64,000 bases of DNA. It comes from Klebsormidium nitens (taxonomy: Eukaryota; Plantae; Klebsormidiophyceae). The DNA lies in contig DF237060.1 of NCBI GenBank assembly GCA_000708835.1, forward strand, positions 62,001 to 126,000, in the 5' to 3' direction. Each line of letters opens with the position of its first letter. The first letter of the stretch is position 1. Both the position numbers and the translations under genes were made by a program. Below the pieces are notes generated by a model. The model was not told the origin of the DNA. It worked only from the letters and a program-made list of their open reading frames with translations, and did no database searches. This document shows, one piece after another, positions 42,637-63,727 of the stretch.

Positions 42637-45600
42637 TTACTGATCCGGCATCAGACGTTGCCTTCTGGGCCTGATTACCCTGTCAATGATGCCGTACTCC
42701 TGAGCCTCCTCTACGTTTAGGTACTTTACTCGGCTCAGATCCTTCTCAACCTGCACCAAATTCAGCCTCGTTCAGTGCCGATAAAACACAAAAACAAGAC
42801 AGGAACTGTCCGCTCAAACAGATTGCGGCAGCTGAACGTACTAGAAAACGACTTTTGTTCATTGGAAGGCAGAACACATAACAAGGAGCAACACCAAGCT
42901 TCGTGCTCCAAGATGGTCATCAACGACGGCCACTCTTGAGAAGGCAGCAACTAAGAAGGCGGCAATCCAATGCTCACCACTTCGTATGGCTTTCCCGTCT
43001 TTTCCGCTAGTACGTTGAAAAGGTACTGCTTCGTCCGGATGAGTTCTTGGGCCTCGTTCTGGATGTCCGACGCCTTGCCTCGGGCCGCGCCTGACGGCTG
43101 GTGCAGCATGATCCGAGCTCGAGGGAGGGCGCTCCGCCGGCCCTGCAAAAGGGAGGCGGCCGCTCAATCATTCTTTCGTCCCGGTCTGCTTAAAGGAATC
43201 CAGACAATCATGTGGGACTTTAAGGGGCTCACATGAGCCGGCTGGAGGGGGCGGTGGTCTGAAACATCCGTCAATTTTTGGAAGCGGAAATAGTGCCACC
43301 CATGCCAATCGGACCCCTTGCCACAAAGCAGAAGTTAGACCCCTTCAAAGTACCCTACTCAGCAAAAAACACGATTTTATGATCGGGCATGATCAGGCGT
43401 GTTAGAAACAGATAGCGCAGGGTGTTGCAGAAACTTGCAGGCACTTCGGCCCCACCTGCAGAGTATGCAATCACAGCAACCGTTGTCTTTAGGACGGTAC
43501 TGTGCCAGCTTTTGTGTTAATACTTTGCGCAGCAGGCACGAGATGCACAAATAAAAGGCCTTAGGCCAATTTTCTTGCACATGCCAGACAGGTTCCGCCA
43601 AAACAGAGCACCAGAGCCAAGACCCGGGACTGCGCGAGCTCCTTGAGCGGACTTCTCTTGAGCTCGTCAGCAAGCAGACCACGTCAACGACTCGGAAGCC
43701 AGGCAGAAAGCCTCTCCTTCAACTCCTACGTCACAAAGACAGAATAGTTGATGCAAAACGAGCACATAAACGGAGAAAAGACAGATAATTGAAGTCGAAC
43801 AAGGTCTTGGCACCGACCTTCGTCCCGGCGGCAAGCAGAAACGCGGCGATCGACCAGGCGTGCCCGAACGCCACCGTCCCGACTTGGCTCTTGAGTGACG
43901 TCATGGTGTCGTAGATCGCGAGCGCGGGTGAGATCTCGCCTCCCGGGCTGTTGATGTAGAGCACCTGCGGCTTGTCGTCCAAGCTGTCCAGGTACAGCAT
44001 GGTCGCGATGATCTGGTTGCCGAACTCTTCGTCGATAGCCTGGCCGACGAACAAAATGCGCTCCCGGTACTGCAGAAAGGAAAGAAGGGAACCAATGAGA
44101 CATTACAAGTTTGCAACAGCCCTCGATGCTCTTTGTTGGGAGGTTTTTTGATTGATTGTCGAACTCTTGGTCTATGGCCTGGCCGACGAAGAAAATTCGC
44201 TCCCGACACTGAAAGGAGGAGCGATACGTACGATTATTAGGAAATGGGAGGGTTAGGAACGGGGAAGGACACTTCACAATGTCTGGTTGCCGAACTCTTC
44301 GTCGATGGCTTGCCTGATGAACAAAATGCACTCCCGATACTGCAAGGAAGAGGTTAAACTGAGAGTGTTTACATGAACTCTCTGCAAGAAATTCTGTGAC
44401 AATAAGAAAAAGCCTCCGGCATATTTGAGGAGTTGAAAAATTGCCGAACTTTTCGTCGATGGCCTGCCCGATGAACAAAATGCACTCCCGGTACTGAAAG
44501 ATGGAGTGATACGTATGATTATTCGGAAGTGAGAGGGTTAGGAACGGGAAGGACAGACTAGTTGCTACTTGTGGCAGTTCGCAAGTGCTGGTTGGAATTC
44601 CTCGTCGATGGCCTGCCCGATGAACAGAATGCGCTCCCGGTACTGCAGGTAGAGGATAAAATGAGAGAACCTACGTGAAACGTCTGCAAAAAGGTCTGCA
44701 ACGAGAAGAAAAGCCTCTGAATTTTGTGAGGAGTGACGATTGATGGATTTGCCGCACTCGTCGTTGGACTGTCTGATGAAGAGGATGCGCTCCCAGTACT
44801 GGACACGATAGCGGAGAGTCAGAGTATGGTATGAGAGTAGTGTATGACAAAAGGAAAGGGTGCGCTGGAAGAGAGTATGTTTTCTACAGATAGCAATCGA
44901 GATCTTCGTCGAAACCTGCAGGATGAACAGACTGGGCTCCCAGTACTGCGGAGAAAAGGAACAGATATGAGAACGTTGAGGGACAGATCGTGCGCGCTGG
45001 AAAGAGGTTTCCAGTTCTCTATTCAGGTGGCAGACTGCAAGACTCTTCAATGATGGACTAGCCGATGGACGAAAGTGCTCCCATAACTGTTAGGAGGACA
45101 CTGTTTGTGAAAGAAGGTGCAACAATCTGATTTACACATTGCCTTTGATCCACTGCTCACACAACAGAAGGGGCGTTCAAAGTCTCAACCCTGCCAACTA
45201 GAAGGAAAACCTTTACGCTGTTCACAGGAAACTTACGCTGTTCACAGGGAACTGCGCCGTTGCAGGAAGTTTGTACTCATCATTCTTTACACGTGGCTGT
45301 AATCTAGTCTCTGACATCCCCGTCAGATGGACTGCGTTGTAGAAAAGAAAGGAAAGGGCTCCCAAGAGTGTGCAGAAGGAGTACAAATTGCCTTTGCAGA
45401 GGGAATTTTGGGGGCAAAGTGTCATTTGGAGATTAAAAGAGGTGCAGCAAAGTAATAGTCTGACTGGCGCAGCCCTCGCTGGATGTCCGGTTGAAGGACT
45501 GCCTTTCCGACCGCGCAAGAGGAGAGAGGAGAACGATTGCTTAGGTGAGCGCTGCGCCGCAGATTGAAGGGTTTGCTATGTAGCGGGTTAAGTCGGTTGC

Positions 45601-47254
45601 CACATTCTACGCAAAAAAAGTCCGGCGAACATCAGATACGAATCTCGTAGGCCGGCCAAGCAGAAAAAGTGGGACTACTTTCTGCTCATGCTGAGAGAGG
45701 ACGAATGAGGAGAGTATAGGGTTAAGCAGCGGAAGAACAGGAGGGGAGAGAAAAGAGCAGCAGCATCTGCAACATTTAGATACCCGGAAGCTCCATTGGC
45801 GAACAATAGGCCAAATAATAGCCCAGAGCAGTGACTAAACACAATCAGTCCAAGAGGTCGCCTGCCCTCCCCTGATATATATAACACCACAGCAATGAGA
45901 CATCTGTGTTGCGACGTGGCTGCAAACGAACCAACAAATCTGTGGCCGCCGCTGACATTAGCAGTACTCTAACTTCCTAAAGCTCAAATAGAGTTTGCAC
46001 GCTGTCAAAGCCTGATATCCAGTGTTCATAAAAGGATGTGGGGCCCCAAGATTGAGCGGACTTTGGGGAAGCTTGCCAGAACGTTCCAAATGTCAACCCA
46101 CTGCCAGCCGCCTTCGCCGGGCGTCCTGTACGGCACCCTCGGAGTGCCAATCGGCATCATAGTGACGGGACCTTTTCTGCTGCCTCCGCTTCGAGCGCTG
46201 CACAGAAGGTGGACAAAGAAAGATTGAGCTGACTTTTGTTGAAGACTAAGTTTGCTTGATCGAGTTGGTCGGAGAAAAGTACGGCCTGCTAAAAGCGGCG
46301 AGTCAGAAATCTAAGAAGCAGAGCCCGAGATCAACTGGGCCACCACCACCATCAACCAAAGATACATGAAGCTGCTGACTGCAAGTCTCAGCTGCGCATC
46401 GATGCCCACTCACCTTGCATGGACGGCAGTCTGCACAGTCTGGTGCAGCTTGCCGTTCAAGTCTTCGCAGGGGCGCCCAACCACACCTGCTCAGAGGACA
46501 GTAGTCAGACTATCCGTACACATATCAAGAACCATAACAAATGGCAATAACTGGAGTACAGTGACAAAGATGCCTACTACTAAGGCCCACTGTTTGTTCT
46601 GGTCTTGTGTACTTCAAGGTGGGTGTCGAAAAGGGGCGTCGTAACGGGGAACCACCTAAGACTGCCCTCTCACTACGCCAGGGGATGCAGGTTCAGGCAC
46701 AGCAGTTTCACACAACATGGCAGGGGGAGCCAATATGGGGCTGCTGACGCTGAGATTCAAACCCACCTGCTGCAGAGCTGCGCAATCCTGCAAATCCAGG
46801 CACCACCAAAGCGCTCGCAGATGGCCGCCTCCTGTAACAAATGAATCGCAGGTGCAAATGGTCACCATTTTGCTCAACTTTTTCACCCCCTGCCTCGGCC
46901 GCAGGTAAATGTTTGAACTCCTCCAGGATACAGGACCAGGACAATCAAGCACCTCTCACTACCAACATGAGAAGTACCTCAACCGGAGGTAAACTCCGGT
47001 TTCTGTTTGAACCTGAAAAGTTGAGCATCGCCTCGAACTCCTTCTCCGGCTGCCAAAACAACCATCAGTCCCAGCGAGAGGTGCACATGCAAAGCGCGGT
47101 TCCTGCCCTGCGTTGGAAAGGCGCACCTTGCTCGCTGGTGCGTGGCTGAGCACTCCGCAACGGGCCTGCGCATCTCGCAAGCGTCTCCCGAGAGCACCCG
47201 CGCTGTTCCCACCACCTTCGCGCACCGGAGCATTCCAAGCGAGCTCGCCGCCAT
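42637..47254 (-). CDS. CLPR2: Chloroplast Clp protease subunit ClpR2-like (259 aa)
   Basis: Exons 47254-47127 (tentative), 46197-46077, 44069-43818, 43142-42978 and 42750-42637. Sequence [28 protein letters not shown]|[32 protein letters not shown]...DLSRVKYL matches plant ClpR2. Intron 2 has a GC donor. Confidence 0.88.
44152..45089 (-). repeat. Seven decaying copies of the ClpR2 exon-3 acceptor junction (AG plus about 55 nt of exon)
   Basis: Echo exon starts at 44208, 44339, 44493, 44642, 44798, 44945 and about 45086 (true exon start 44069). They translate [98 protein letters not shown], and a decayed seventh. Confidence 0.92.
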
Positions 47255-48017
47255 TCTCCCCTTCCTGTTGTGGTGATAAAAGTTCTGTATGAACCCCGCG
47301 ACCGGATTAATCGAGAATGCAGAGCCTAGACTCTAGAGATGCTGAAAGTGTGACTGTTACAGTCACTGTGACAGCGTCCAACACCTGCCCTCTTCAGGGT
47401 TCGAGTTCAATGACATTAGCCACCCATCAAAAGCAGAGGCAAAGCGAACACCAAGTTATATTCGCTTAACCTAGGTTCGAGAAGGTTTTCCCTCCTACAA
47501 CCGCTAGAACGGTTAAGTTTGCCGCTATATAACGTAATCCAGCCTCACACCCTCTATAGGGTAGGTTAGTGTCATCGGTTACGCGTGCGGTTACATACCC
47601 CAGCTAAGCTTAACCACGTCTGCAGGATCACATGTAGATACATCTAAACAAGCTTGTTCTCACTTTGCTTTAGTTCTGGCTTTGGCAGGTTTGAAGCGCC
47701 CCATGTTGCCTTTGAAAGCATCCTTTCAATCTTTCAAAGTTGCGCAGAAGATCAATCTATGTAGTTCATCGTCCACGCAGCCTCGGTGCACAAAAGCCGA
47801 TTGGAGACATTTCTAAGCCGGATTGAATCACCGGTTGACTCCTTTGAGTTGCTGAGTAATCAGCAAGTTAGACAACTTTCAACAGGAGCAATTGCTGGAG
47901 CTCCACGTTGATCACAGCCCAGAGTTTCAAGCTGAAAAGAGTTAGAGGGAGGGGAAGTGCAAAAGGAAAGCTGCATTGAAAGCCCGGGCAGGATTGCGAT
48001 TCCTTGATCCCGCAAAG

Positions 48018-51000
48018 ATGGTGAGCTTTCTTGGTTCTTCTCGCCAGATGCTACACCAGCTCTTCTTAGCTGTAATGAGGTTCTTATCTTTAGCTGTAAT
48101 GAGGTTCTTATCTGATTGCGTTCAGCCTTGTTTCCTACTCATTTGAGAATCCTCTTGGGGGCTTTGCTTACAGTTTGACAATCCTCTCATCAATTTCGCT
48201 GGCTTGACATGGGCAGCCTTGACATATTGGTCTTTTTGGGACTCAATCTTTGACACATGATAGTAGTCAAGACAAATCCTGGAGGCCAGGAAGTCTGACC
48301 AGCAAAGGCACCCTAATGCTCAATCAGAGCTCGAGTGGTGATACAGAAGGTTGCTTAGCACACGAAAGACAGAGAATGGCCGGTACGCTTTGTGAGCCTA
48401 GTCGTCTGCACTGGCGATGGACTCAAATGCACCACTCAGGCTTTTGACATCGGAGATCCTCAATGTCATCTCAATCACGTTCCCGAAGCCTGGATCAACT
48501 CATTTTAAATCAGATGACTCCTTGACTAACCGGTGTCTACAACCTCTTCCAGAACTACCTGATCGGCCTTGCTGGGCCCCCCTGCACTGTGAATATAACG
48601 TTTGCGGACGGGGACACGCGGAAGACTACCACCGTGAAGAAGGAGAACGGCACCACCGAGCTGGTGGCGCTCTTTTCAGGGCAGGAGACGGTCGCCGGCG
48701 AGGTAAGCTGCTCTTTAAGAACTTCTTAGTCTTTCTTTGATAAATACCCAGAACAGGTTAATTTGTTTTACTGGAGTTTTCACGGTTTCAGAAGCAGGTG
48801 CAGTGGGCTTCGATCGCAGCGTTGGAGCATTTGGCTGAAAAGTCAAATTAGCACTTGGGTCGACACTTCTGTAGTGAGGCACCTTACTCATCTATTGGTG
48901 TTTTCGATGGGCACTTTGCAGACTATGGTGATTGTTGCTTTGCAATTGTCTTCTTACACTTGGGCTTGAAGAAGCATGAGTTGTTTGGCAGTGACAAGTT
49001 TGCTTGCCAAACCATTGGCCGCAGAGTTCAAAGTATTTCACAAGCTGCATAAAACCGTCCGCCAATCTGAGCTTGCAGCACTGGCACGGTCGGGCCAAGC
49101 TGGGGCAACATTCTCGTAAACTAGATCCCGATAGGAAGAGTTACTACATAAAGTCTCCGAAGCAACCATAATGGGCTCATCCTTGCAACAGAAGGTGTCG
49201 TCCAGGAATGTGACTTTGTACGCCTCACCATTGCCTCGCAGTTGCCCCGCCTTTTGCCTTTAAACAAAGAGACTGGGCCCTTTTGGAATCTGTGCTGTAA
49301 GGACGTGGCCAACATGAATGAGCTGAATGAGCTGCTGTGCCAAACAGCCATCTATTTCACCTCCATTTTCCACTGACAATCTCAGCTGTGGCTTTTGTCA
49401 AAAAATGAGTCTCCGCATGGAAGGAGAGTCGAGCACATGCGGCTACCAATGAGCGCTCGAGGTCGACTCGAGTCTCTTCAAAGCCAGTTCCTGCTACCTT
49501 TTTGGTCCTATTCTCGAGATGCAGCTCGACCTTGATCGAGGAAAAGAAGGGCACTCGAATCGAGGTTGAACTTGGGAAAACTGAGTTCCTTATGCGTTCC
49601 ACGACACAGATCCTCTGATGAATCGCGATTGAACCCTAAAACCCTAAAACCCTAAACCCTAAAACCCTAAAAGTCAACCCCCTGCCTGGGAACGAAATCA
49701 AGCACCCGGGTAATAAGATCTAGCTGTCGGGATCTGAACCGAGAATGCACTCCTTTCCCTACTCAGGAGCAAAAGCTCCTACCCGGGGATCCGGGATCTC
49801 ACCCCCGTTTCGGCCTCATGCAAACCAACCCGGTGCCCTGCAGGAAGGTCGAGCACACGGGCATCAAAGATTGAGCTGCTGGGAGTGATCAGGCTCTACT
49901 TATCGCAGTCATCACAGAACCATGTGTTCCCATCCTCGAGTGTAGATATTTCCTGCCTGGCGGATCCGGGATCTCACGCCTGTTTCGCCCCCCGGCTTTT
50001 TAGGTGCAAATTGACCCCCTCCCCGGCAAGAAGGTCGAGCACACGGGCATTATTATCGAGCTTCTGAACCAGATCAAGCTCTTACTTCAGACCATATCTT
50101 AGGTACATTGCTCCTCCTCCGAGCTACCGGGTTCTAATCGTTCCCCCCCTCCCAATCTCCAGGTGCAAATCGACCCCCTGCCCGGAAAGAAGGTGGAGCA
50201 CACGGGCATCAAGATCGAGCTGCTGGGCCAGATCGAGCTCTACTTCGACCGCGGCAACTTTTACGACTTCACGTCGCTCGTGCGCGAGCTCGACGTGCCG
50301 GGCGAGATCAAGGACCGCAAGACGTTCGGCTTCGAGTTCTCCAACGTCGAGATGCAGTACGAATCGTACAACGGGGTCAACGTGCGCCTGCGGTATATCC
50401 TCAAGGTCACGATCAGCCGGAGCTACGCGGCCAACATCGTCAAGGAGAAGGACTTTTGGGTGAGGCGCGCGTTCTCGGAAAATGCGTTTTGTCAGTCATT
50501 CCTGCGCTTTGTAGATCAATTGGGTTCATATATCCCGGCGCATGCAGATGAGAAGGAATTTCGGGATGAGGGCGCGCTTGCTCGCCTTCCACTGCCATGT
50601 ATCGTTTGAAAATTATATTTGTTAACTGGCTATCTATTTCTTTCTTTTTTCTTTTTTTGAGAGTACGAGGTAGTTTTCTGTACGTAGTGATTGTGAAGCC
50701 GTCTGATGTGGAGAGCATGAACACGCCAAAGATATGTCTATAGAAGGATTAGCCAAGGGGAAGAAGATCGTGAGAAAGCGTGCGATACGCTACTGCGCTT
50801 TCTGGAAACGTGGCCTGAATTGAGAGAATTGTGCGCACGTGCGCACAAGGCTATTGCTCTGGGAGCTTGCGTACGGAAGTGATCGGGTCAGTCGTTGAGG
50901 TGACAAATTCTCACTCTTTGGTTTCAATACTCAATAAGAAGGACTTTGGGGTGAGGGGCTCGTAAGCAGCTCGTCGCCTGAGGTGATTTTCGTGACATAT

Positions 51001-53461
51001 GATGTTGCACCTGTTCAAGCCTGCCCGAGTCAGTACTGCGAAGAGGTACATCGTGCGTTGCATGGCGTCGGTGCTTCGAGGTTCCCGTTTTTCTTCTTCG
51101 AAGCAAGCAATCCGTATCATGCTTCAGGGAAATGCCACGCAAGGGCATTGACAGACAACCGTGCATAATATTTGGCTTGACTTCTCTTTTAGGTGCGCAA
51201 CATGTCGCCGCCGCCCGAGATCAACAACAGCATCAAAATGGAGGTCGGGATCGAGGACTGCCTGCACATCGAGTTTGAGTACAGCAAAGCCAAGTGAGCG
51301 CTCCCGAACGCCTTCTTAATCCCAAGTGGAGGCCTCCAAACGTCGATGTTGCTTTCAGCAAAATTGAGTCAATCCTCGAATGTTCATGGATAATACGGCA
51401 TACTGAGTTTGAGTACAGCATAACCAAGTGAGCGCTCCCAAGTGGTCTCTCTTCTAAGTCTCTAAATCCATCTGGAGAGTCTTCAAACGTTTCTGTAATA
51501 GGCAACAAACCTAAAGGCTTTCGAATGTTCGTTAAATAACACCGCAGCCTGGCTGTGGTCGCACATCAGGGGCTGTGAGTGTGTCAAACCCAGCGCGCAT
51601 TTGAAAGGTTGGACGCCCCCTTCTCTCTCATCATCGAAGTGATGTGGGGCATCCAGCATGCAGCAGATTGGATAGTGCCACTTATTTGAAGCTTTGATAG
51701 CTTATTGAACCAAAGTCAAACCCAGACGCAGCGAACCCCAAACTTGAAAACTCCAGAGCCGAACCGAGCGGAAGTCAGAACCCAACAGCTCATTCTGCGG
51801 ATAGATCACCTAAACGACGTGATAGGGGAGCAATTTGTTTCCTTGCTGGTGCGAATGGAAGTAGACTCAAATCGTTCAAACGCGAATCCAACCGCAGACG
51901 ACGAATCTGACCACACCTACCTCAACCCTACCACTTGCGCCTGCACATGTATCACCTGGAGGCTGTGATTGTGCGCATAAGCTGTTTCTTGCTGGTATGT
52001 GACAGAGATTTTACGTTACATTTGGGGGGGGGACAACGCATAACGCCTTCACAATCTGGATTCATATGAAATTTAACCCTTACTCTCGCGTAGTACCACC
52101 TGAACGACGTGATTGTCGGCAAAATCTAATTCTTGCTGGCACGTGATACGTTTTAAGCTATCGTGGAAGTGTATGCAAATCGCTTTCAACTGCAACGCAA
52201 CCTTATGTCGATTTCAAACCTTACTCCCCTGCAAGTACCACCTGAAGGACGTGATCGTGGGCAAAATCTACTTCTTGCTGGTGCGGATAAAGACCATTCC
52301 AGGAATCATCTTAACGCGAACGAGGAACCATCTCAACACGAACCCGACCGCAAATCGCTATTCCGACTGTAATCTAGTTTAATCGTAGTTCTTACTCTCG
52401 TGCAGGTACCACCTGAAGGACGTGATCGTGGGCAAAATTTACTTCTTGCTGGTGCGAATAAAGATCAAGCACATGGAGCTCGAGATCCGGCGGCGAGAGT
52501 CCACCGGCTCAGGGCCCAACACGTACAACGAGAGCGAGACGCTCGCCAAGTACGAGATCATGGACGGCGCGCCCGTCAGAGGTGGGCGCTTATGGGAGTA
52601 AACGTCCGCAGCGGAGTCGAAGAGTTTATATCAGAGATGTTTTTTAAGTCGGTTTGCTGATTACTCCGACTGGTGGCGCAAATCTGGCTCGCACGAAGTC
52701 AAAGGTGGAGTGGTACTGAAAGGGGTACTCGTTCATATTGGTTCTTCCTTTCAAAGTATATCAAAGTCCCCGATCGGAAAGCGGAGCGCTCACCGGGTGC
52801 GGCCTGCTGCCATTATGATTGAAAGTGTTGTCGCTGTGTCACTCAAAATGACCGCTTCAAAGGATTTTCGATGAGAAAGCGACAGGGTCATGTGGATACG
52901 AGCTCACTGGACACCTGTGCTCGTGTCGATACCGGTTGCTGATCGGGAGTAATGAAATTCTGTGGCAGATGATGCTTCTAAATATGTTTTGGTCAAAAGA
53001 ATTGGCGCGGGTGACACGCACTTCAGCTCTGCTTTTAAGGTGTCGAAGCCATCATTGGCCTCCAACTTCTGATGGAGAGGTTACATCCCATCCGGTGGGC
53101 GCACACATGGCAATTTCGCAGATTGATTTGAGCTGACGTGGCCGTCAACCGGGCTGTGCCTTGTATTCGACGTCTGATGGAGACTTCACGTTTCGATCGA
53201 GGACAGATGGGTCATGTAGCTTGGCGATCTGCGCTGACGAACCGTCGTCCGAACTTTTGTCGAAACCAATTGAAAGGTTCTGTTTGTGCAGGCGAGTCCA
53301 TCCCCATCCGATTGTTCCTCAGCCCCTACGACCTCACGCCCACGTACCGCAACATCAACAACAAGTTCAGCGTCAAATACTACATCAACCTAGTTCTCGT
53401 GGACGAGGAGGAGCGACGGTACTTCAAGCAGCAGGAGATCACGATGCTCCGGTTAGAATGA
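48018..53461 (+). CDS. VPS26: Retromer subunit VPS26 (298 aa)
   Basis: Exons 48018-48020, 48553-48702, 50163-50459, 51193-51293, 52406-52581 and 53292-53461, phase-consistent. Contains KKVEHTGIKIELLGQIELYFDRGN, IKMEVGIEDCLHIEFEY and KFSVKYYINLVLVDEEERRYFKQQEI. Confidence 0.95.
49398..50090 (+). repeat. Five decaying copies of the VPS26 exon-3 acceptor junction
   Basis: Copies of GTGCAAATCGACCCCCTG...GAGCACACGGGCATCAAGATCGAGCTG with equivalent starts at 50004, 49818, about 49667, 49519 and about 49398 (true start 50163). The two farthest are weak. Confidence 0.85.
49634..49672. repeat. Interstitial telomere-type tract (CCCTAAAA)n / (TTTTAGGG)n
   Basis: Five units: CCCTAAAA x2, CCCTAAA, CCCTAAAA x2. 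Confidence 0.9.
50545..50965 (+). repeat. Copies of the VPS26 exon-3 donor junction
   Basis: GAGAAGGAATTTCGGGATGAGGGCGCGC (near 50550) and AAGAAGGACTTTGGGGTGAGG (near 50935) vs true GAGAAGGACTTTTGG|GTGAGGCGCGCG. Confidence 0.65.
51399..51490 (+). repeat. Copy of the VPS26 exon-4 donor junction
   Basis: GAGTTTGAGTACAGCATAACCAA|GTGAGCGCTCCC vs true GAGTTTGAGTACAGCAAAGCCAA|GTGAGCGCTCCC, 134 nt downstream. Confidence 0.9.
51803..52300 (+). repeat. Four decaying copies of the VPS26 exon-5 acceptor junction
   Basis: GTACCACCTGAAGGACGTGATCGTGGGCAAAAT...TTCTTGCTGG copies at 52235, 52093, 51949 and about 51803 (true start 52406). Spacings 171, 142, 144 and 146 nt. Confidence 0.9.
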
Positions 53462-54625: not shown

Positions 54626-57600
54626 CTAAAGGATCACGCAGCAGCCCTTGACTGGGGTCGGCCCATCCGCATCCTCGCCTGTCGGCCTGGCTCCCACGCG
54701 CTCATCCCTGCCTTCCTCAGCGGGCTGCCCAGTGGCAGCAGGCACAGCCCCCACAGACGCCGGCGCGCTTTTCTCCGCTGCTACCCCGCCATTCGCATCT
54801 CCGTTCGTTGCCACGTGTCCATTTGCTGCCATGTGGCTCGCTGCGGCTTTGTCCACGGACTCTACCGGCCCCGTCTTTGCAACATCGCTAGACGCCGATG
54901 TCTCAAGTGCAACCGAATCATCGGGTGTTCCGTTCACGTTCTGTGCAACACGTGCCAGAACGTTCTCTACGCCTGTTTTCGCGGTAAGCTTCACAGCTGA
55001 TCCCGCAGCAGCCGACGGTGGCGCGGGGTCTGCACACTTTGCGCTCTTTCTCGCGGCTTCCTCCTCGATTGCCGCCCTCTCAAACGCGTGTCTCTCCTCA
55101 GTCCCCTTCTCCTCAGCGATGCTGATTTCAGCCACGTGCACTGCCCCTACGTCTGTCCCCACCTGGGGTTCCGGCGTCGGCGCTCTTTCCGAACCCTTTG
55201 CGCTGTTTCGCACGGCTTCTTCCTCGATGGGAGAGCTCTCAAACGCGAGCTTCTCCTCTCTCGCCCTCTCCGCAGTTTGCGCGGCAGCCGCTTTCATCTC
55301 CGTTTCCGCCTTCGCCTTCTTTTCCGCATCCTCTTTCGCACTCGCTTCAGCAGCCCTCTTTGCAGCGGCCTCCCGTTCCGCTTTCTCTTCGGCTTCCCGT
55401 CTCGCCTTCTCCTCTTGCGTTTTCTTCGCTGCCGCCTCTCTCTCCCCCCGAGCTTTTTCCTCGGCTTCCCTCTTCGCCTTCTCGTCGGCTGCGACCCTCG
55501 CAGCTTCCGCCTCAGCTTCTTTTCGCGCTTTCTCCTCCGCAGCTTTCTTCATCTCAGCCTCGTTCTCCGCCCTTTTCCTCTCTTCTCTCGCCTTCTCTTC
55601 GGCAGCCTTCCTCTCTGCCTCCTCCCTCTCGACCCTCGCTTTTTCCTCCGCAGCTTTGGCGGCTGCCTCCCTTTCCGCCCTTGCTTTCTCCTCTGCTGCA
55701 ATTCTTGCAGCCCGTTCCTCCTCTTCTCGCTTCGCTTTCTCTTCCGCTTCCCTCTTCAGCGCCGCCTCGTGTGCAGCCCTCTCCTCTTCTTCCTTCATTG
55801 CTCTTTCCCTCTCCTGCTTCTCAGCCAACTCTTTCTCGGCCGCCTCTCTAGCAGCCGCCTCCGCTTCCTTCTTCTCCTCTGCTTCTTTCCGCGCCGTCTC
55901 CTCACTCGCCAGCTTCTCCTTTGCTTCCTTTTCCTTCTTCACACTTTCGGCCCTTTCTAGTTTCAGCTTCTCCATACGCTCTTTCAGCTCCTCGCGCTTC
56001 TGAGAGCTTGCCCCAACGTCGCCCTTCTCCAACTTCGGCTTCACAGCGCTGACATCAGCAGCCCCCACACGCACCTCGCTCGTGCCAGTGGCCCCAGCCA
56101 GCCAACTAGCAGCAGCCTCTCCTCCCTCCATCATGGTCGTCTTTTTCTTCCTCTCCGACTTGCTTTTGGTCAGCGTGGCTTCGCTGGCACTTGAACCGGA
56201 CCCACTTACACCAGCGCTGGGCCCACTCACACCAGAGGCCTCCTCAGGGGACGGTGACTTTCCAAACGTCTTTTCGACCGCGTCCTGGAGGGCCTGCCCA
56301 GCCCGCTTCTGCTGCGCGGTAGGGGGGAGTCCGGAAGAGGCGGCCCCCTGGGAAGAAGAACCCCCCAGAATGGAAGGGCGGGCCTCGACCTCCAGCTCGG
56401 TGTCGCTGTTGTCGACAGAGCCTGCGGGAATCACAATTCTTCGGTTCCACATTAAGGAGTTGAGATTTTCTGGGAAAAAGCACAAAGCCAGGGAAATCAG
56501 CACGCAGGATAGAAAAGGAATCTCGAGCCCTCACTGGCCTCTTGACCAATAAGTTTCAGGTCTTTTAAAACGTGATACACAGTTGCTCCATATGCCACAA
56601 GAGCACAAGAGACTTTTCGTAGGAGTCTGGTTCGTCCAGAACCACCTGCCGATAATGCTCTAGACCCCTGTCCTGAAACACAATCGATCAAGAGTGAAAA
56701 TGAGAAGACAGTGCATCACGAGGTTATCCTTAAGTGGCTTGCATCCAGGCGAAACAACACCTTGTGAACCAGTATTCGATCCTTGTAGATGTGTCAACAA
56801 GGCCCCAGAAACTTTGTGAATGCAATATCCATCTGCCAGGTGATTCGGCTGAGCCTATGATGCCTGAAAGAAGTGATGGTCAATGACCATATATTTCAGT
56901 ATCATACGAGCGCTTGACCTTACGGGCATAACAATATTGTGCGTTTTTTATCGTCCGCCAGTGGCAACATAAGGTACAAAGGTATTTGAGGCGAAAAGTA
57001 AAAGGTGACCACGGCACCTTCAAAGCCATCCGGTTCTGAAAGACCCGATTGGTTCGCGATGAGGAGCATAACAAGGGCTCCAAATATATACCAGAATTTA
57101 CATGACTGATCCTGGTGCAACTTCTTAAAAGTGGCATTGCCTTCAGTCCACCTTTTCGAAACAGACGCATTGACTTCTTTCGGCTGCACTTCAGTCCTTG
57201 CGTGAAGCAAAGTCTCAACATTTCTTGTGAACCCTCCTCTCTACAGCACAGCCAAGTCGTTAAAGCTGAGAGAGGGAACCAAGAAAAAGACAACATAGGG
57301 CACGACGCGCTCTCAGATTATATACTGCACATTGTTGTCCCTGGAGCTCCTCAAAACCATGGCTCCTAAGGTTCTACACATGACTGCCTTGCTCTTCCTG
57401 GAGTAGGAGTCTTCACTAGCCGGAGAATGCTCACAGGCTTGTCTACATGACACTCTGGTAAGGGTTTTCAAATTGACCTACTCTATGAGCCTCACAGACT
57501 CATGTCAGGAGCGCTCCCTTAGTCGAGGTCAGTAGATGAACAAAACAACAGTGAAATGTGAGCACTCACCACCAACAGAGTTTTGCCCGCTTACAGTCCC

Positions 57601-58542: not shown

Positions 58543-61500
58543 ATGGACAGGTCAGGAGGCGGCACGGCCAGCAGCGCCGCTAGGGCGAAGGCCGTAGCGC
58601 GCCCCTCCTGGTGGGACTTGTACGAAGTGGTGGGGAAGATTGGAGAAGGGACCTACGGCCTCGTCTATCTGGTGCGAGTCAAAGACAAAGCGCAGGGCTA
58701 CAAGCTGGCAATTAAGAAGTTCAAGCCGTCCAAGGATGGGGACGGGGTATCCCCGACCGCTATACGGTGAGCTTTGACGCTTTTCACAATGGCCAGCTCT
58801 CCTGCATCGCACTGATGATGTAGCCGCTGGTCATGTTGAGACGCCTCAGTCCTAGTGGAAACCAGAAGCAGATGAAGCGGGCTTTCTTCATCCCAAAAAG
58901 GAGCTGAAGTTGCCTCTTCTCCGGCTCCTCGACCACCTCATGCACCGGATTTCAAGAAGCTATTTGACTTTGTACGCTGCAAACTCTTAATGCTCAGTGA
59001 GCCCCCAGCGTATGTAAGAATCGGGAGACTTGAGCCCAATGACAAATGGTCATCGGTCCTCTCTTCAGGAACAACTATGAGCAACTAGGACCAGAATGAG
59101 TTGGGTCTTCTTCTACGGGCAGAACAATTCTCACTCACCAGCAAACTAGTTGCCCAATATGTAACTGATCAAGCAACAAAAGCTGCTTTTGTGTGCAGAG
59201 AGATCATGCTCCTGCGAGAATGCTGCCACGAGAACATTGTCAAGCTGGTAAATGTTCACATCAACCACGCGGACGCGTCACTCTACCTGGCGTTTGACTA
59301 TGCCGAGTACGACCTCTATGTACGTTTTATACACCGCATCAGATCCATTCTGGGTCGCTTGATGTGATTGTGTTTATGAGAAAAGATTGTCTGGCGTCCT
59401 GGATACCTGGCTAACACACACTTCGGTCGTCAGTTGAGCGACATGGAGGCTGGGAGGAGAAACTGATCTGGTCAACCATGTAACCTTCTGGTGCGGCAGA
59501 AAGCAAGCCTCTAAAGAAACCCCCCCTGCCGTGCTCAAGGTTCTGGTTGGTAAGGACTGCGACAAACTGTGATGAGACATCCGATCCAGTCGAAGTTCCA
59601 AGCTCTTGCAGATGGAGAATTCTGATTGGAACCACTCTAAAGCTCCTCCCATCGCTCTTCTTCCACCGCTTGTATGAAACTCTTTTGAAACTTTCTGGCC
59701 CGCCCTCCGAGGAGTCACGGGACCCAGTCTGCCCCGCAGGAGATCATCCGCTTCCACCGTGAGAAGCTCCAGTATGCCATCAGTCCGTACACAGTCAAGT
59801 CCCTCATGTGGCAGATCCTCAATGGGCTCCACTATCTGCACAGGTAGGTCATCTATCAAAGCAGATGAGCAACAAGGAATTGTCGGACATTGTGAAGAAA
59901 GGTTTGGCAGTGACAAGAGGAACCAGTTTATATGTATGTGGAAGCCGCCCCAGGTAGTTCGTTCTTCATGAGATGGCCCACTTAGACATTGCAGAGCGCT
60001 CAAAATCTGGCTGCCAGGTTTGACCAATGAGACTGTGCCTCTCTGTCCGACTCAAAAGCCACACTGTCCTTGACTTTTCAACAAGGTTAGCGCAAACCTT
60101 CAAGATGAAATGCCTAGATCCCAACCAAGCACGGCCAAGACGTCTTCTGCGGCCTTGCTGTCGAAGGCCGCACGTGTCTTGATCGACTTTTATTTAGAAA
60201 CCCCCAAAGTCGGTCGCCTGCAGCAATTGGATCATCCACCGGGACCTTAAGCCGTCCAACATTCTGGTGATGCGGGAGGGGGACGAGGCGGGCGTCGTGA
60301 AGCTGGGCGACTTTGGCCTGGCGCGCATCTACCAGGCGCCGCTCAAGCCGCTCTCAGACAACGGGGTGAGACGTTCTTACACCTGAAGTGTCTTGGCAGA
60401 GTCTGAACCCCAATACTTGATTAAGATCAGGTTGTAAACGGTCATACTCCAAGTGCCGCAATACTACTTCAAACCTTTAAGTTTTTGAAAAAGTTTGCGA
60501 GCAGCTTCCGTATATGCAATACATGTTAATGTCAAGGTCTACCTAAAGTAATAGCAACTTTGACCGCGCCTTACTTTACAAAGAGATCTACACCTGTGGT
60601 CACTCCGTCTTTACATAACTAGGGTCTCGAAAAATGGTTCCTGAATCGACCTGCGCAATGATGTTCGTCATGACCTTAAATCCCCCTTCGAAGTCTCCTA
60701 GCAGCGCGTACTCGTTCTTGGAGTTCGTTAAAGAGTTGGTGGCTGTGCTTACGGCCGGCTGACCTGTGCAGTCGAGCGCAAGGTGCTGTGGACCACTTCA
60801 AACCTTTTAAAGCTCTTTGAACCTTTTGCTTTTTGACTTTTCAGGGATTCTGAAGATTCAACTGGAGTTGCGTCAAGTCTTGGACTTATCCGTAGGTCCA
60901 TTCGAAGCAAACGTCAGAACAATGTGGTCTCGATTTTGCCAGTACACTGTGACGGTGCGGTACCGCATGCCGGACCCGCTGCTCGATTTGAAAACCCCAA
61001 CAGATTCCCTTCCGATCGGATTTTTAACGTACTGGGACACAGAAATGAAGGTTAAGCTGCAGCGGATCTTTTAGGACTCGCAAGGAGGTCACGTCAGCGG
61101 CCCGTGCAGAGATTCGAGACCGCCGAACAGAAAGTTTTGCTTTGTGATACTGCTTCTTTGTAACGGCTGCAGTAGTTCCGGACAATAAAGCCTGGTCGGA
61201 TGGGAAGGCAAGAAAGTCCTGAAGGCAACGGGTATTCCGGTCAGTCTGAATCGAAGGAGTCTCCCGCCAAAGCACTCTCACAAGTATTGCGAGAAGTTTG
61301 GTAAGGATCAGTTCGGGACTCGTGAATAACAACTACCGCCATGCTTGGGACTCGTGGAGTTGATTCTCAAATTGTTGGGACTTCCGAACTTGTGAAGTGA
61401 GTCCAGAGTCCAAAATATGACTATTCTATCAAGGAGCGACCAAGAGAACGGTGAGAGTGACGCGGTCCCTGTTTGTGGTGACGGTTTGGTACCGTTCGCC

Positions 61501-63727
61501 CGATATGCTGCGGGGCACAAACAATTGCAATACTCTCCTTTTCATTGTCGAGGACTTCCACCCGGACACAAAGGCAAGTAATAAGTTGCAGCGGGCCTCG
61601 TAAGACTCAAGAATGAAGACACCAAGCAAACCCGGTCCCTATTTCGGCAGGTGGTGGTGACGGTATGGTACCGCTCGCCGGATTTGCTGCTGGGCGCGAA
61701 GCACTACACGCCGGCGGTGGACGTGTGGGCGGTGGGGTGCATCTTTGCGGAGCTGCTGACGCTCAAGCCGCTCTTCCAGGGGGTCGAGGACAAGGGCATG
61801 CACAACCCGTTCCAGATCGACCAGATCGACAAGATCTTCAAGGTCCTAGGTAATGGTCGAAGGCATTCAATCCTCTTTTTAGGGCCCTACTTAAAAGCAA
61901 AATTATTCCGTTTCTCTTCTGCTGTTCAGCGTAGTAGCGAATGACTGGCACTGGGCACGGCAAAGAATCCTTAGGAGCGGGAAAGCATGCACAGCCCGTT
62001 CCAGATCGACCAGATTGACAAGATCTTTAAAGTCTAGGTGATCATTGTCATTCGAGTTCTTCACGGTCCTAGGCAAAGACAGTTGTCATCAAGTCCTCCT
62101 TTTCTCTCAAAGTAGTCTCGAGTGGCGAGAGCGAGGAAGCATTGTCAGAGCTGGATAGGAGCGTTCACAACCCCTTTCAGTCGACCAGATCGACAAGATT
62201 CTCAAGGTCCTAGGTAGCGATGCATGTCACTATACGGTCCTTTCCTTGCGTCGTTCCACGTTGTGTTGAGTGACTCACAGTGGGCGTGCAAAGCCCTGCC
62301 GAATTGACCAAATCGAAAAGATTCTCAAAGTGTTAGGTGAGGCAATTACGCATTTTGCGCCTGCGCGTTTATTCTTGATTTGTTATTGTTGACAAACCCC
62401 TTTGCATCGAATGTTGGGGCAGGAGCTCTTGCTTCCTGCTTTCCCAACGTGTATCCCGAAGCAGTCGGTGTCGAGACGGTGCGTGAACACTGGTCAGGCA
62501 TTGCTTTAGAGTTGAAATGATGTTTTGCGAGACTCTGCTACCTTGGTTTTTATATCCAAAGATACAATCGGTCCATAAATTATGAAACTCATTCGGAGGC
62601 AAGACGTACCACGTGAGTGCGGTGCAAAGTCCTCTGCTGATCGCCTCGCCGCCTGCGTACAGGTCCCCCGTCTGTTGACACGTGGCCGGGCCTGGCGCAC
62701 CTCCCGTACTGGCAGCATAATCGGCAGTCCATCCAGAACAAGAAGTAGTACGTGTTTCTCGACACCCTTCCTGTTTGTACTCTCCAATCTGATAGTTTTG
62801 TTACAGATCAGTAACCGGCAGTAGGTGCAGTCGGTCCTGTCAGCCGCGATCCCCGTCTCAGCATCTGACCCCTCATCCAGAACGTGTGATCTCTTGTCTG
62901 CGCTCCCATCCCCTATGTCATGCTGTCACACGCAGTCTGCCAGTGCTTACTTGGGTATATGTCAGGCGCTATTTTCGCAATGCGAATCAGACGGCTTTTG
63001 ACCAAAGATCCTGAATCGGTTTCTGTCCCTCACTTCCCTGTGATCAAACAGCGCCTTCCCTCCATTCTCTCGTCGCCACATAGCCCTCCCAGCTTTCACT
63101 TTCAGACAGCCCCTGACATTAAGAGAGATTCCACGTGGCAGATCTCCTCCCGAACCCCCTTCATGCAACAAGACCAAACCCGCCATCCTTCTTTCTCGCA
63201 GTGACCACCCGCTTCTGCCGAGCATGACGGCGCACTTCGCAAAGACCGCCGCTTACGACCTGCTGACGAAGATGTTCGAGTACGACCCCGCCAAGAGGCT
63301 GACCGCCGAGCAGGCCCTTAAGCACGAGTACGTAACCCATTCTGGACTGGTTGATTGTCCTCACAACTTGAAAGCTAAGAGATTTCAATCAGGCGCCCGG
63401 GGGACGAACGGGTTAATGTTAGGCGTTAGGGTAGGTACGGGCATGAAGGTATGGTGAAAGGTCCTGGGATTTCTGGATCTCAGGCCTCGTAACTGTCCAA
63501 GGTTCTCGTTTTGAGCGAGCTGTGCAAGCTCGGTCCGAGCCCAACGTGAAATCTGATTGCAATTTTTTCGTGGAAGTAACAATTGCAGCCTTCAACTTGC
63601 CGTCAGCAATACAAAATGACAACGAGCTTTAGCATGAGGAAGCTGCCTTGCAGATGTCTGGTCCTTTGACGAAGGTTGTGGACTGCGCGTGCAGGTACTT
63701 CCGTCAGGAGCCGCTTCCCGGAAAGAA
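58543..63727 (+). CDS. CDKE: Cyclin-dependent kinase E / CDK8 (Mediator kinase), 3'-partial
   Basis: Exons 58543-58766, 59199-59319, 59740-59843, 60224-60365, 61651-61849, 62663-62744, 63202-63327 and 63695-63727, continuing past the window. Motifs GEGTYG, SPTAIRE (plant CDKE signature), [14 protein letters not shown] and VVTVWYRSP. Confidence 0.93.
60943..61530 (+). repeat. Copies of the CDKE exon-5 acceptor side
   Basis: GTGGTGACGGTTTGGTACCGTTCGCCCGATATGCTG (near 61475) and GTGACGGTGCGGTACCGCATGCCGGAC (near 60949) vs true GTGGTGACGGTATGGTACCGCTCGCCGGATTTGCTG. Confidence 0.75.
61975..62345 (+). repeat. Three decaying copies of the CDKE exon-5 donor junction
   Basis: Copies of CACAACCCGTTCCAGATCGACCAGATCGACAAGATCTTCAAGGTCCTAG|GT with GT at 62038, 62214 and 62337 (true GT at 61850). 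Confidence 0.92.

What the first reader, a model, noticed from the sequence alone, without database searches (positions are those of the whole stretch)
44152..62345. Splice-junction 'echo' arrays: three unrelated genes fill their introns with roughly nucleosome-sized copies of their own exon boundaries
Seen in sequence: ClpR2 (7 acceptor copies), VPS26 (5 and 4 acceptor copies, 3 donor copies) and CDKE (3 donor and 2 acceptor copies). Each unit is a piece of intron, the splice site and 50-80 nt of the adjacent exon. Spacing is mostly 120-190 nt, and similarity generally falls with distance from the live exon. Acceptor echoes lie upstream of the exon and donor echoes downstream. The sequences are gene-specific, so this is not a transposon family. 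Established: the nucleosome core wraps about 147 bp, and tandem duplication across splice sites is a recognised route to intron change. Inference: a recurrent, possibly genome-wide process duplicates junction-spanning segments of about one nucleosome and pushes older copies into the intron, so introns grow from their own exons. The junction focus could reflect targeting (chromatin phase, spliceosome pausing, R-loop or RNA-templated repair). It could also be a detection artefact, since exon-derived text is easier to recognise and internal exon duplications are purged by selection. I do not know of a description of this pattern but cannot search the literature.
Basis: partly seen in the sequence, partly recalled or inferred. 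Interest (0 to 1): 0.88.

Follow-up and report, generated by a model that had tools for sequence, protein, structure and literature searches.

The report
Exon-edge copy arrays inside Klebsormidium introns
In the alga Klebsormidium nitens and its close relatives, many introns hold regularly spaced (about 145 bases), decaying copies of the neighbouring exon's edge and splice site; these make up about 29% of the intron DNA of three genes here, which makes this an apparently undescribed route by which introns grow.

Summary
In a Clp protease gene, VPS26 and a CDK-type kinase gene of Klebsormidium nitens, seven intron arrays hold direct copies of the adjacent splice site plus 25-85 nt of exon. Spacing is 105-189 nt (median 149). 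The copies are gene-specific and never inverted. Independent RNA assemblies reproduce two of the arrays exactly.

The copies are neutral relics. They carry stops and frameshifts, and echoes in two related algae diverge at the same rate as other intron DNA. The RNA contigs laid over the Clp gene and VPS26 exons 2-4 join only the live splice sites.

Syntenic contigs of related Klebsormidium algae carry their own arrays: 11 in 48 kb, across 7 genes. Some sit at the same junctions, and one echo looks orthologous. No purely intronic array of this unit size was found (18 of 18 at exon edges, p about 5e-7). One in-frame 159-nt duplication lies inside an exon.

Spacers between copies are weakly homologous, so the arrays began as whole-unit tandem duplications. 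Exon parts are kept far better than spacers. I therefore favour old, exon-anchored arrays refreshed by gene conversion and unequal exchange over a hyperactive junction-targeted duplicator, but targeting is not excluded.

The Clp array intron, with seven intact acceptors, stands at 27-50% of exon depth in RNA.

Other first-stage readers noted the same pattern in at least nine other windows of this genome (unchecked). I found no published description.

The parts
44070..45100 (-). Acceptor-echo array of the Clp protease gene. Seven copies of the polypyrimidine tract, CAG and about 57-65 nt of exon lie upstream (in gene direction) of the live acceptor. They form alternating A/B units, that is, a dimer of about 290 nt.
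   Evidence: All seven keep CAG. An RNA contig 44041-46106 is identical in 3 runs.
43817..44069 (-). Live Clp exon whose 5' edge is the source of the echoes.
   Evidence: Splice joints 43141>43817 and 44069>46077. Pfam CLP_protease, E = 2.8e-26. 84% identical to the relative's exon.
45455..45539 (-). Possible eighth, very decayed Clp echo.
   Evidence: Score 40 against a shuffle maximum of 38.5; 61% identity. Weak.
49506..50162 (+). Acceptor-echo array of VPS26 exon 2. Echo exon parts start at about 49520, 49669, 49819 and 50004.
   Evidence: The echo at 49819 shares a derived GGGAGTGATC with the relative's second echo.
50163..50459 (+). Live VPS26 exon 2. Both of its edges are echoed.
   Evidence: RNA joint 50458>51192. 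Pfam Vps26, E = 3.9e-38.
50460..50963 (+). Donor echoes of VPS26 exon 2, at about 50548-50584 and 50927-50963.
   Evidence: 81% identity over 36-37 nt, with GT kept.
51294..51450 (+). Donor echo of VPS26 exon 3. The echo itself lies at 51396-51450, 134 nt from the live donor.
   Evidence: Spacer homology z = 4.6.
51789..52405 (+). Acceptor-echo array of VPS26 exon 4, with four echoes at 51803, 51949, 52093 and 52235.
   Evidence: RNA contigs 51266-52261 and 51314-52261 show 0 differences.
60926..61650 (+). Acceptor echoes of the kinase (CDK-type) exon 5, at about 60926-60985 and 61460-61538.
61651..61849 (+). Live kinase exon 5. Both of its edges are echoed.
   Evidence: Pfam Pkinase, E = 1.2e-13. 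Conserved block 61647-61853.
61850..62354 (+). Donor-echo array of kinase exon 5, with echoes at 61985, 62160 and 62283, plus a weak one at 62056.
55012..55275 (-). In-frame tandem duplication of 159 nt (53 aa) inside the long exon of a Glu/Lys-rich protein. It has the same unit size as the echoes but lies within an exon.
   Evidence: about 75-80% identity, depending on the stretch compared. It lies inside the open reading frame 54626-56503.
49632..49672 (+). Interstitial telomere-type repeat, about five CCCTAAA(A) units, sitting exactly where the acceptor of the third VPS26 exon 2 echo should be.
   Evidence: It is the only such run in the window.

Best explanation
The echoes are neutral relics of local tandem duplication of a 100-190 nt DNA segment that straddled an exon edge.

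After such a duplication, only the copy still joined to the rest of the exon can give a correct mRNA. The other copy is stranded in the intron. This is why acceptor echoes lie upstream of the exon and donor echoes downstream.

Each array then behaves like a minisatellite:
- Blocks are re-duplicated, as with the Clp dimer.
- Copy number changes between close relatives.
- Old copies decay.

One member of each array, the live exon edge, is held constant by selection. It repeatedly re-seeds homology in its neighbours, most simply by short gene-conversion tracts confined to the still-homologous exon part. The exon parts therefore stay recognisable, and the array stays recombination-competent long after the spacers have diverged.

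This makes exon-anchored arrays very long-lived, whereas unanchored intronic duplications fade. That difference gives the exon-edge bias.

Splicing normally ignores the echoes, probably because an isolated acceptor or donor has no partner site to define an exon. A dense set of intact decoy acceptors, as in Clp, may slow removal of the intron.

Shown:
- The copies are direct, local and gene-specific.
- Spacers are homologous between units.
- The echoes evolve neutrally.
- The live splice sites are the ones used.
- Arrays recur and turn over across species.
- Arrays are restricted to exon edges in this sample.

Inferred:
- Gene conversion.
- Anchoring as the cause of the bias.
- Tolerance through exon definition.
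- A causal link between the decoys and intron retention.

The confidence given (0.55) is for the whole package. The core claim, neutral relics of whole-unit tandem duplication that evolve as arrays, I hold at about 0.85. Exon anchoring, rather than mutational targeting, as the cause of the exon-edge bias I hold at about 0.45.
For: - Orientation and specificity: 45 direct local matches in the whole window, none inverted in these genes, and no match between arrays of different genes.
- Spacer homology: against a null of real intron segments, 14 of 26 unit pairs score at p < 0.05. Whole-unit alignments exist in the Clp dimers and in the relative's VPS26 donor array.
- Neutrality: echoes carry stops and frameshifts, and echo-lineage changes fall 54/41/66 over codon positions 1/2/3. 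Between L002 and the merged contig R, divergence is 2.9% in exons, 5.7% in echo exon parts and 5.3% in other intron DNA.
- Splicing: RNA contigs join only the live sites.
- Exon part younger than spacer: VPS26 exon 4 echo 1 is 95% against 66%; Clp live-e1 is 82% against 53%; kinase donor echo 1 is 80-90% against 59%. The junction-anchored profile shows the same asymmetry.
- Mosaic echo: Clp e1 carries two live-specific derived sites, while its spacer pairs with that of e3 at 86%.
- Long life: echoes at both VPS26 exon 2 edges occur in three Klebsormidium lineages, and one echo shares a derived motif across species.
- Turnover: L002 and R differ in copy number.
- Exon-edge restriction: 18 of 18 arrays are at exon edges (p = 5e-7), with one in-frame exon-internal 159-nt duplication showing that the same unit size also arises inside exons.
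- Age: no whole-unit copy younger than about 86% was seen. This fits old seeds rather than frequent ongoing targeted duplication.
Against: - Gene conversion should also homogenise the spacers. That the exon parts alone stay similar needs a threshold effect or an exon-limited template, and neither is shown.
- To explain 18 of 18 arrays, anchored arrays must outlive unanchored duplications roughly 20-30 fold. This is my estimate and was not tested.
- The narrow unit size (interquartile range 131-159) is unexplained by this model and hints at a specific mutational mechanism.
- The old echoes in R and L002 show no sign of conversion; they diverge at the neutral rate.
- The sample is about 22 kb of K. 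nitens and 48 kb of one relative, not a genome.
- The depth values are assembler word depths of contigs, not read counts.
Confidence: 0.55

Rival explanations
1. A mutational process actively targets exon edges. Candidates are staggered nicks or breaks about one nucleosome or one Okazaki fragment apart at the sharp GC and chromatin boundary of exons, RNA polymerase II or spliceosome pausing, or R-loops. Fill-in or end joining then yields a tandem duplication of about 145 nt. Selection removes the duplications that lie wholly inside exons.
For: No intron-internal array of this unit size was found in about 25-30 kb of intron, against 18 at exon edges. The size distribution is narrow. A 159-nt in-frame duplication lies inside an exon. 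A telomere-type repeat, the classic footprint of a healed double-strand break, sits exactly at an echo's acceptor. Staggered breaks with fill-in are an established source of small tandem duplications (PMC8355091).
Against: No young whole-unit duplication at any junction. Spacers are mostly only weakly alike, so seeding events look rare and old. The newest Clp event is internal to the array. Nothing here measures nucleosomes, nicks or R-loops.
Confidence: 0.3
2. Exon-limited copying through RNA. Spliced mRNA, a splicing intermediate or its cDNA serves as the template that writes or refreshes exon-edge sequence in the intron. Homology therefore stops at the splice junction.
For: Homology falls from 79% to 52% and then 38% within 20 nt on the intron side, but persists about 50 nt into the exon, for acceptors and donors alike. 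Exon parts are far younger than spacers.
Against: Echoes keep the polypyrimidine tract and AG, or GT plus 5-20 nt of intron, which spliced RNA lacks. Spacers are homologous, which points to whole-unit DNA duplication. The tandem direct arrangement is hard to obtain by cDNA insertion. No reverse transcriptase footprint was seen.
Confidence: 0.1
3. The arrays are selected regulatory elements: decoy splice sites that tune intron retention or unproductive splicing.
For: The Clp array intron stands at 27-50% of exon depth in three RNA studies, against about 1-4% for almost all other introns of the gene (one 5' intron is unspliced in run X4). All 7 Clp echoes keep the polypyrimidine tract and CAG. 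The decoy-exon model of intron retention exists in mammals (PMC6097662, PMC7373989).
Against: Pooled retention of splice dinucleotides is not clearly above the neutral expectation: acceptors 13 of 22 (18 of 27 with five read by eye), donors 10 of 12, against an expected 56%. Echoes diverge at the neutral rate between L002 and R. VPS26 array introns are at only 1-3% of exon depth. The Clp array is absent from the relative. Arrays occur in many unrelated housekeeping genes.
Confidence: 0.1
4. Generic replication slippage spread evenly over the DNA, which looks junction-focused only because exon-derived text is easier to recognise.
For: Small tandem duplications of 20-24 nt do occur inside introns (45213, 48066, 52301). 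The relative has one intronic minisatellite with a 29/59-nt period.
Against: Tool-based scans are blind to exon status and still find no intronic array with a 100-200 nt unit. Allowing a twofold detection advantage gives p = 5e-7 for 18 of 18.
Confidence: 0.05
5. Alternative or mutually exclusive exons, a transposon or introner family, or assembly artefacts.
For: None beyond the superficial resemblance to tandem exon duplication.
Against: Echoes have only one splice site, carry stops and frameshifts, and are not joined in RNA contigs. No similarity exists between arrays of different genes. The copies are diverged, and they are reproduced in independent RNA assemblies and in independently assembled relatives.
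Confidence: 0.02

Closest known systems
Human F7 intron 7 minisatellite (37-bp VNTR whose first unit spans the exon 7 donor; PMC1557585)
   Same: A tandem array starts on an exon-intron boundary, so each unit carries a pseudo 5' splice site. The site next to the exon is the one used.
   Different: It is a single locus with a 37-bp unit and near-identical copies. Here there are many genes, acceptor as well as donor arrays, units of about 145 nt, strongly decayed copies and recurrence across species.
Intron gain or change by tandem genomic duplication across AGGT (PMC3265369, PMC4974935, PMC2891723)
   Same: A tandem duplication includes splice signals, and the splicing machinery chooses one copy so that the mRNA is unchanged.
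   Different: Those cases create a new intron from exon sequence in one step. Here existing introns are lengthened by serial copies. I found no evidence that the introns themselves arose this way: VPS26 intron 1 starts with unrelated sequence.
Small tandem duplications from staggered breaks or paired nicks with fill-in (PMC8355091; work on paired nicks in plants, from my own knowledge)
   Same: Direct, local, head-to-tail duplication of tens to hundreds of bases with no mobile element involved.
   Different: No known preference for exon edges, and no preferred size of about 145 nt.
Minisatellite and satellite array dynamics with higher-order repeats and gene conversion (established knowledge)
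   Same: The dimeric higher-order unit in Clp, copy-number change between close relatives, and mosaic units.
   Different: One terminal unit is a functional exon edge under selection, so the array is anchored and polar.
Decoy-exon model of intron retention (PMC6097662, PMC7373989)
   Same: Unpaired intronic splice sites are associated with a strongly retained intron longer than 1 kb (Clp, 2 kb).
   Different: The mammalian decoys are conserved cryptic exons with both splice sites. Here there are seven acceptor-only copies of the real exon edge, and no functional test has been done.
Introners / introner-like elements (PMC9860276)
   Same: A lineage-specific process that adds intron DNA in many genes.
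   Different: Introners are a dispersed sequence family inserted from elsewhere. The echoes are derived from the host gene itself and share nothing between genes.

Membership tests
Tandem duplication / minisatellite-like array | Copies are in direct orientation, adjacent, and at a regular period. | tested here: met
   No nearby inverted copies in these genes. Median period 145, interquartile range 131-159.
Tandem duplication / minisatellite-like array | The whole unit, spacer included, is homologous between copies. | tested here: met
   Met only weakly in most pairs. 14 of 26 spacer pairs score at p < 0.05 against a real-intron null. Homology is strong in Clp e1/e3 and e2/e4 and in the relative's VPS26 donor array. 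TRF itself reports none of the arrays.
Tandem duplication / minisatellite-like array | Copy number varies between close relatives. | tested here: met
   L002 and R are 92-95% identical including introns. They have 2 and 3 donor echoes respectively, and their minisatellites differ in length.
Transposon / introner family | The same sequence is present at many unrelated loci. | tested here: not met
   No matches between arrays of different genes in the window or in the relative.
Tandem exon duplication giving alternative or mutually exclusive exons | Each copy has both splice sites and an open frame, and is used in mRNA. | tested here: not met
   Echoes carry one splice site only and have stops and frameshifts. 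RNA contigs join the live sites only. Contigs can miss rare isoforms.
Intron origin by tandem duplication across AGGT | The 5' end of the intron is a copy of the downstream exon start, and its 3' end is a copy of the upstream exon end. | tested here: not met
   VPS26 intron 1 begins GTAAGCTGCTC, unlike the exon 2 start. The first 800 nt hold no echo.
Decoy splice sites causing intron retention | The intron carrying the decoys is retained well above its neighbours. | tested here: inconclusive
   The Clp array intron is at 27-50% of exon depth, against about 1-4% for almost all other introns of the gene, in 3 runs. VPS26 array introns are at 1-3%. The values are contig word depths, and causality is untested.
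Nucleosome-templated duplication | Unit boundaries are in phase with mapped nucleosomes. | not testable with these tools
   Only the size (median 145 nt) is compatible. No chromatin data were available.

The most novel reading that the evidence does not exclude
Klebsormidium has a process that specifically copies or refreshes exon-edge sequence in the flanking intron. It would work either by breaks targeted to exon boundaries or through an exon-limited (RNA- or cDNA-templated) donor. If so, introns in this lineage are systematically built from, and kept similar to, their own exons, and dense decoy sets such as the one in Clp feed back on splicing as intron retention.
Probability: 0.25. Interest if true: 0.9.

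Novelty: new variant of a known kind. Interest (0 to 1): 0.72.

Why it matters
How introns grow, and why their lengths differ between close species, is poorly understood. Transposons and slippage are the usual answers. Here 29% of the intron DNA of three ordinary genes is recognisably derived from the genes' own exon edges, and one intron is three times longer than its orthologue because of such an array.

The pattern recurs in unrelated genes and in related species, so it is a property of the lineage, not a curiosity of one locus.

It also provides a natural experiment for splice-site choice. There are dozens of stranded acceptors and donors, many still keeping their AG or GT and up to seven in one intron, that the spliceosome ignores. 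The one such intron with seven intact acceptors is strongly retained.

If the exon-edge bias turns out to be mutational, it would reveal a new link between gene structure and DNA breakage or repair. If it is due to anchoring by the selected exon copy, it is a clean example of selection on one repeat unit shaping the fate of a whole neutral array.

Tried and rejected
- Tandem Repeats Finder finds none of the arrays, because the copies are too diverged and gapped.
- My first semi-global identity matrices were misleading, because free end gaps inflated the baseline. I replaced them with global alignments tested against shuffles, and with a null of real intron segments.
- A GC3-based exon finder was too noisy, because the signal is symmetric on both strands. 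I defined exons by conservation with the syntenic relative and by RNA joints instead.
- The apparent RNA joint 51290>52232 is a mapping ambiguity. The first 33 nt of the echo are identical to the live exon, so it is not echo usage.
- Run X17, labelled as DNA of a second organism, behaves as spliced RNA and gave no intron comparison.
- I tested for selection on echo splice dinucleotides. Clp keeps 7 of 7, but the pooled counts are not clearly above the neutral expectation.
- I tested for coding constraint on echoes and rejected it.
- I looked for a nested RNA gene that could explain the Clp intron depth. There is no Rfam match in 43-64 kb, and no block inside the intron is conserved with the relative.
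- I looked for evidence that VPS26 intron 1 originated by duplication and found none.
- Nine literature searches and the genome paper's main text gave no description of the pattern.
- One look-up was wasted on a coordinate slip over the stop codon of a minus-strand gene.

Full report
**What the window is**

An intronless ORF at 19093-20130 is 99% identical to KFL_001110140 of Klebsormidium nitens, on a 193,786-nt scaffold. The window is therefore nuclear DNA of this streptophyte alga.

The three genes in the finding are confirmed at family level by Pfam:
- Clp protease: exon 43817-44069, minus strand.
- Vps26: exon 50163-50459.
- Protein kinase: exon 61651-61849.

I did not test the finer names ClpR2 and CDKE.

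I built the exon maps from two sources:
- RNA splice joints.
- Conservation with a syntenic contig of a related alga. Its exons are 78-91% identical and its introns are otherwise unalignable.

- The repeat finder.
- blastn self-comparison.
- Smith-Waterman scans with shuffle thresholds.

The arrays in K. nitens are:

| Array | Echoes |
|---|---|
| Clp acceptor | 7, perhaps 8 |
| VPS26 exon 2 acceptor | 3-4 |
| VPS26 exon 4 acceptor | 4 |
| VPS26 exon 2 donor | 2 |
| VPS26 exon 3 donor | 1 |
| Kinase exon 5 acceptor | 2 |
| Kinase exon 5 donor | 3-4 |

- Spacing between neighbouring copies in K. nitens is 105-189 nt, median 149. Pooled with the relatives, n = 46, median 145, interquartile range 131-159.
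- Identity to the live exon falls with rank (Spearman -0.56, p = 0.005), but not monotonically.
- Arrays of different genes share no sequence.
- No nearby inverted copies exist in these genes.

The arrays are not assembly artefacts:
- The copies are diverged.
- Three RNA runs from different studies each contain one identical 2066-nt contig spanning the whole Clp array.
- Two RNA runs contain contigs of about 950-1000 nt across the VPS26 exon 4 array with no differences.

**The echoes are not used and not constrained**

- RNA contigs join only the live sites: 50458>51192, 51293>52406, 44069>46077 and the other Clp introns.
- One odd joint (51290>52232) is an ambiguity, because the nearest echo is identical to the live exon over its first 33 nt.
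- Echoes contain stop codons and frameshifts. Substitutions assigned to the echo lineage, using the relative as outgroup, fall 54/41/66 on codon positions 1/2/3.
- Two closely related algal contigs, L002 and R, are 92-95% identical including introns. Between them, divergence is 2.9% in exons, 5.7% in echo exon parts and 5.3% in the remaining intron. Echoes therefore evolve as neutral intron DNA.
- Splice dinucleotides are retained in 13 of 22 acceptor echoes and 10 of 12 donor echoes. About 56% is expected from overall identity.
- All seven Clp echoes keep the polypyrimidine tract and CAG. The pooled data do not show selection.

**The pattern belongs to the lineage**

I merged four overlapping look-ups of one JGI metagenome contig into 47,971 nt, syntenic with the window from 40.3 kb onward.

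This relative has 11 arrays of its own in 7 genes:
- A Clp acceptor, at a different exon from the K. nitens array.
- The VPS26 exon 2 acceptor and donor.
- The VPS26 exon 4 donor.
- The acceptor of the Glu/Lys-rich gene.
- The kinase exon 4 donor, the exon 5 acceptor and a 3' exon acceptor.
- Acceptors in a purine/cytosine permease gene, a coiled-coil gene and a Kelch gene.

Further comparisons:
- A third Klebsormidium-like contig (L007) also has one acceptor echo and one donor echo at VPS26 exon 2.
- The second VPS26 exon 2 echo of K. nitens and that of the relative share a derived change, GGGCCAGATC to GGGAGTGATC. At least this echo therefore predates the species split.
- Other arrays are lineage-specific. 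The K. nitens Clp array is absent from the relative, whose intron is 678 nt against 2007 nt.
- L002 and R differ in copy number.
- A more distant alga (L004-L006, exons 76-80% identical) has short introns, lacks VPS26 intron 1 and shows no echoes.
- In K. nitens the recognisable arrays make up 3.4 of 11.8 kb (29%) of the intron DNA of the three genes.

**The exon-edge bias is real in this sample**

The scans are blind to exon status. In the intron-rich parts surveyed (about 22 kb of K. nitens and 44 kb of the relative), every array with a 100-200 nt unit includes an exon edge: 7 plus 11.

The exceptions are instructive:
- One 159-nt (53-aa) in-frame duplication lies inside a long exon of a low-complexity protein. 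The same unit size therefore arises inside exons and survives where it is harmless.
- The intron-internal tandem repeats found all have much smaller units: 20-24 nt pairs and a 29/59-nt minisatellite in the relative.

A duplication of 150 nt placed at random among tolerated positions would span a junction 29% of the time. Allowing a twofold detection advantage raises this to 45%. The chance of 18 out of 18 is then 5e-7. The first 44 kb of the window has no arrays, but it consists mostly of intronless or long-exon genes.

**Anatomy and history**

Anchored at the junction and compared without gaps, echoes match the live copy as follows (background about 25%):

| Array type | Exon side | Intron side |
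|---|---|---|
| Acceptors | 79% near the junction, falling to 53% at about +50 | 52% at -1 to -10; 38% at -11 to -20; about 30% further out |
| Donors | 80%, 70%, 52%, 41% over the four 10-nt bins nearest the junction | 70% over the first 10 nt; 39% over the next 10; background beyond |

- The spacers are nevertheless homologous. Against a null of real intron segments, 14 of 26 spacer pairs score at p < 0.05. Clp e1/e3 (86%) and e2/e4 (74%) and the relative's VPS26 donor units align over whole units. The arrays therefore began as whole-unit tandem duplications.
- The exon parts are kept far better than the factor of two expected from the live copy being frozen. VPS26 exon 4 echo 1 is 95% in the exon part and 66% (47% counting gaps) in the spacer. 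Clp live-e1 is 82% against 53%. Kinase donor echo 1 is 80-90% against 59%.
- Clp e1 is a mosaic. Its spacer pairs with that of e3, but its exon part carries two sites that are derived in the K. nitens live exon.
- The newest whole-unit event in Clp duplicated the e3-e4 dimer, not the live junction.
- No whole-unit pair younger than about 86% exists among roughly 60 units.

**Interpretation**

These facts fit best with old tandem duplications that behave as minisatellites and are anchored by their one selected member.

- The live exon edge keeps re-seeding homology in neighbouring exon parts, most simply by short gene-conversion tracts. This keeps the array detectable and able to undergo unequal exchange for very long times.
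- Unanchored intronic duplications decay and disappear.
- This accounts for the exon-edge bias, the exon/spacer asymmetry, the similarity gradient, the sharing of junctions between species and the lack of young seeds.
- It does not explain why spacers escape homogenisation.
- It does not explain the narrow unit size.
- It needs anchored arrays to outlive others by an order of magnitude or more.

The main rival is a break or nick process that targets exon boundaries at a spacing of about one nucleosome or one Okazaki fragment. It is supported by the size distribution, by the exon-internal 159-nt duplication and by a telomere-type repeat, the signature of a healed break, sitting exactly at one echo's acceptor. 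It is weakened by the absence of young events.

An RNA- or cDNA-limited template would explain why homology stops at the splice site. It is contradicted by the retained intron signals and by the spacer homology.

Tolerance of the echoes is most simply explained by exon definition, since a lone acceptor or donor has no partner. This is an inference.

**An unexpected functional correlate**

The Clp intron that carries seven intact decoy acceptors appears as one contig running from exon to exon in each RNA run:

| Run | Array intron, word depth | Flanking exon contigs |
|---|---|---|
| X4 | 474 | 908-1108 |
| X7 | 116 | 342 |
| X13 | 57 | 209 |

- This is 27-50% of exon depth.
- Almost all other introns of the gene are at about 1-4%. 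The exception is one 5' intron, left unspliced in run X4.
- No Rfam family or conserved block in the intron explains the depth.
- VPS26 array introns are at 1-3%.
- This resembles the decoy-exon model of intron retention (PMC6097662), but it rests on contig word depths and one gene.

**Novelty**

I ran nine full-text searches. Their terms combined Klebsormidium, introns, tandem duplication, splice sites, pseudoexons, intron gain, repair-based tandem duplication and intron retention. None found a description of this pattern. The main text of the genome paper does not mention introns or repeats.

Single cases of arrays spanning a splice site are known, such as the F7 intron 7 minisatellite (PMC1557585). 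So is intron creation by one tandem duplication (PMC3265369, PMC4974935). What is new is the scale, the regular unit, the presence of both acceptor and donor arrays, the anchoring on exon edges and the recurrence across a genus.

Other first-stage readers flagged the same pattern in at least nine other windows of this genome. I could not check those.

Noticed in passing
window 44070-46076 (Clp intron): The echo-bearing intron is present in three RNA runs as one exon-to-exon contig at 27-50% of exon depth. Almost all other introns of the gene are at about 1-4%. This suggests strong intron retention, possibly caused by the seven intact decoy acceptors.
   Followed up: partly
window 49632-49672: An interstitial telomere-type repeat, (CCCTAAAA)n with one CCCTAAA unit, lies inside VPS26 intron 1, exactly replacing the acceptor of the third echo. 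It is the only such run in the window and looks like the footprint of a break healed by telomerase. Matching repeats are abundant in RNA contigs from other loci.
   Followed up: partly
window 55012-55275 (minus strand, ORF 54626-56503): An in-frame 159-nt (53-aa) tandem duplication lies inside a long Glu/Lys/Ala-rich exon. It has the same unit size as the junction echoes. The rest of the exon (55250-55950) is a low-complexity coding repeat.
   Followed up: partly
window 19047-37800: A tandem array of about eight diverged intronless F-box-like genes (63-75% identity, spacing 2-3.6 kb). It contains no junction echoes. Three inverted matches lie at 26404-30100.
   Followed up: no
window 45213-45253, 48066-48113, 52301-52343: Small two-copy tandem duplications of 20-24 nt lie inside introns; the one at 48066 is 100% identical. 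Small-unit duplications therefore do occur away from exon edges, unlike the class of about 145 nt.
   Followed up: no
window 46831-47125: This 5' intron of the Clp gene is unspliced in the dominant contig of run X4 but spliced in X7 and X13, which suggests condition-dependent retention.
   Followed up: no
L002 1255-1275 versus R 10336-10345: L002 carries a short duplication of GACTTCTGGG (period 13 nt, one mismatch in the longer reading) spanning the VPS26 exon 2 donor. R lacks 7 nt here, so only GGG remains of the second copy. It amounts to a very small, recent junction echo.
   Followed up: no
L004 4380-4450 (also L005, L006): In a more distant green alga, the position of Klebsormidium VPS26 intron 1 is uninterrupted coding sequence. 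The echo-rich intron is therefore either a Klebsormidium-lineage gain or a loss in that alga.
   Followed up: no
R (merged relative contig) 13446-13741: An intronic minisatellite with a 29/59-nt period starts within about 10 nt of the VPS26 exon 4 donor. Its length differs between R and L002.
   Followed up: no
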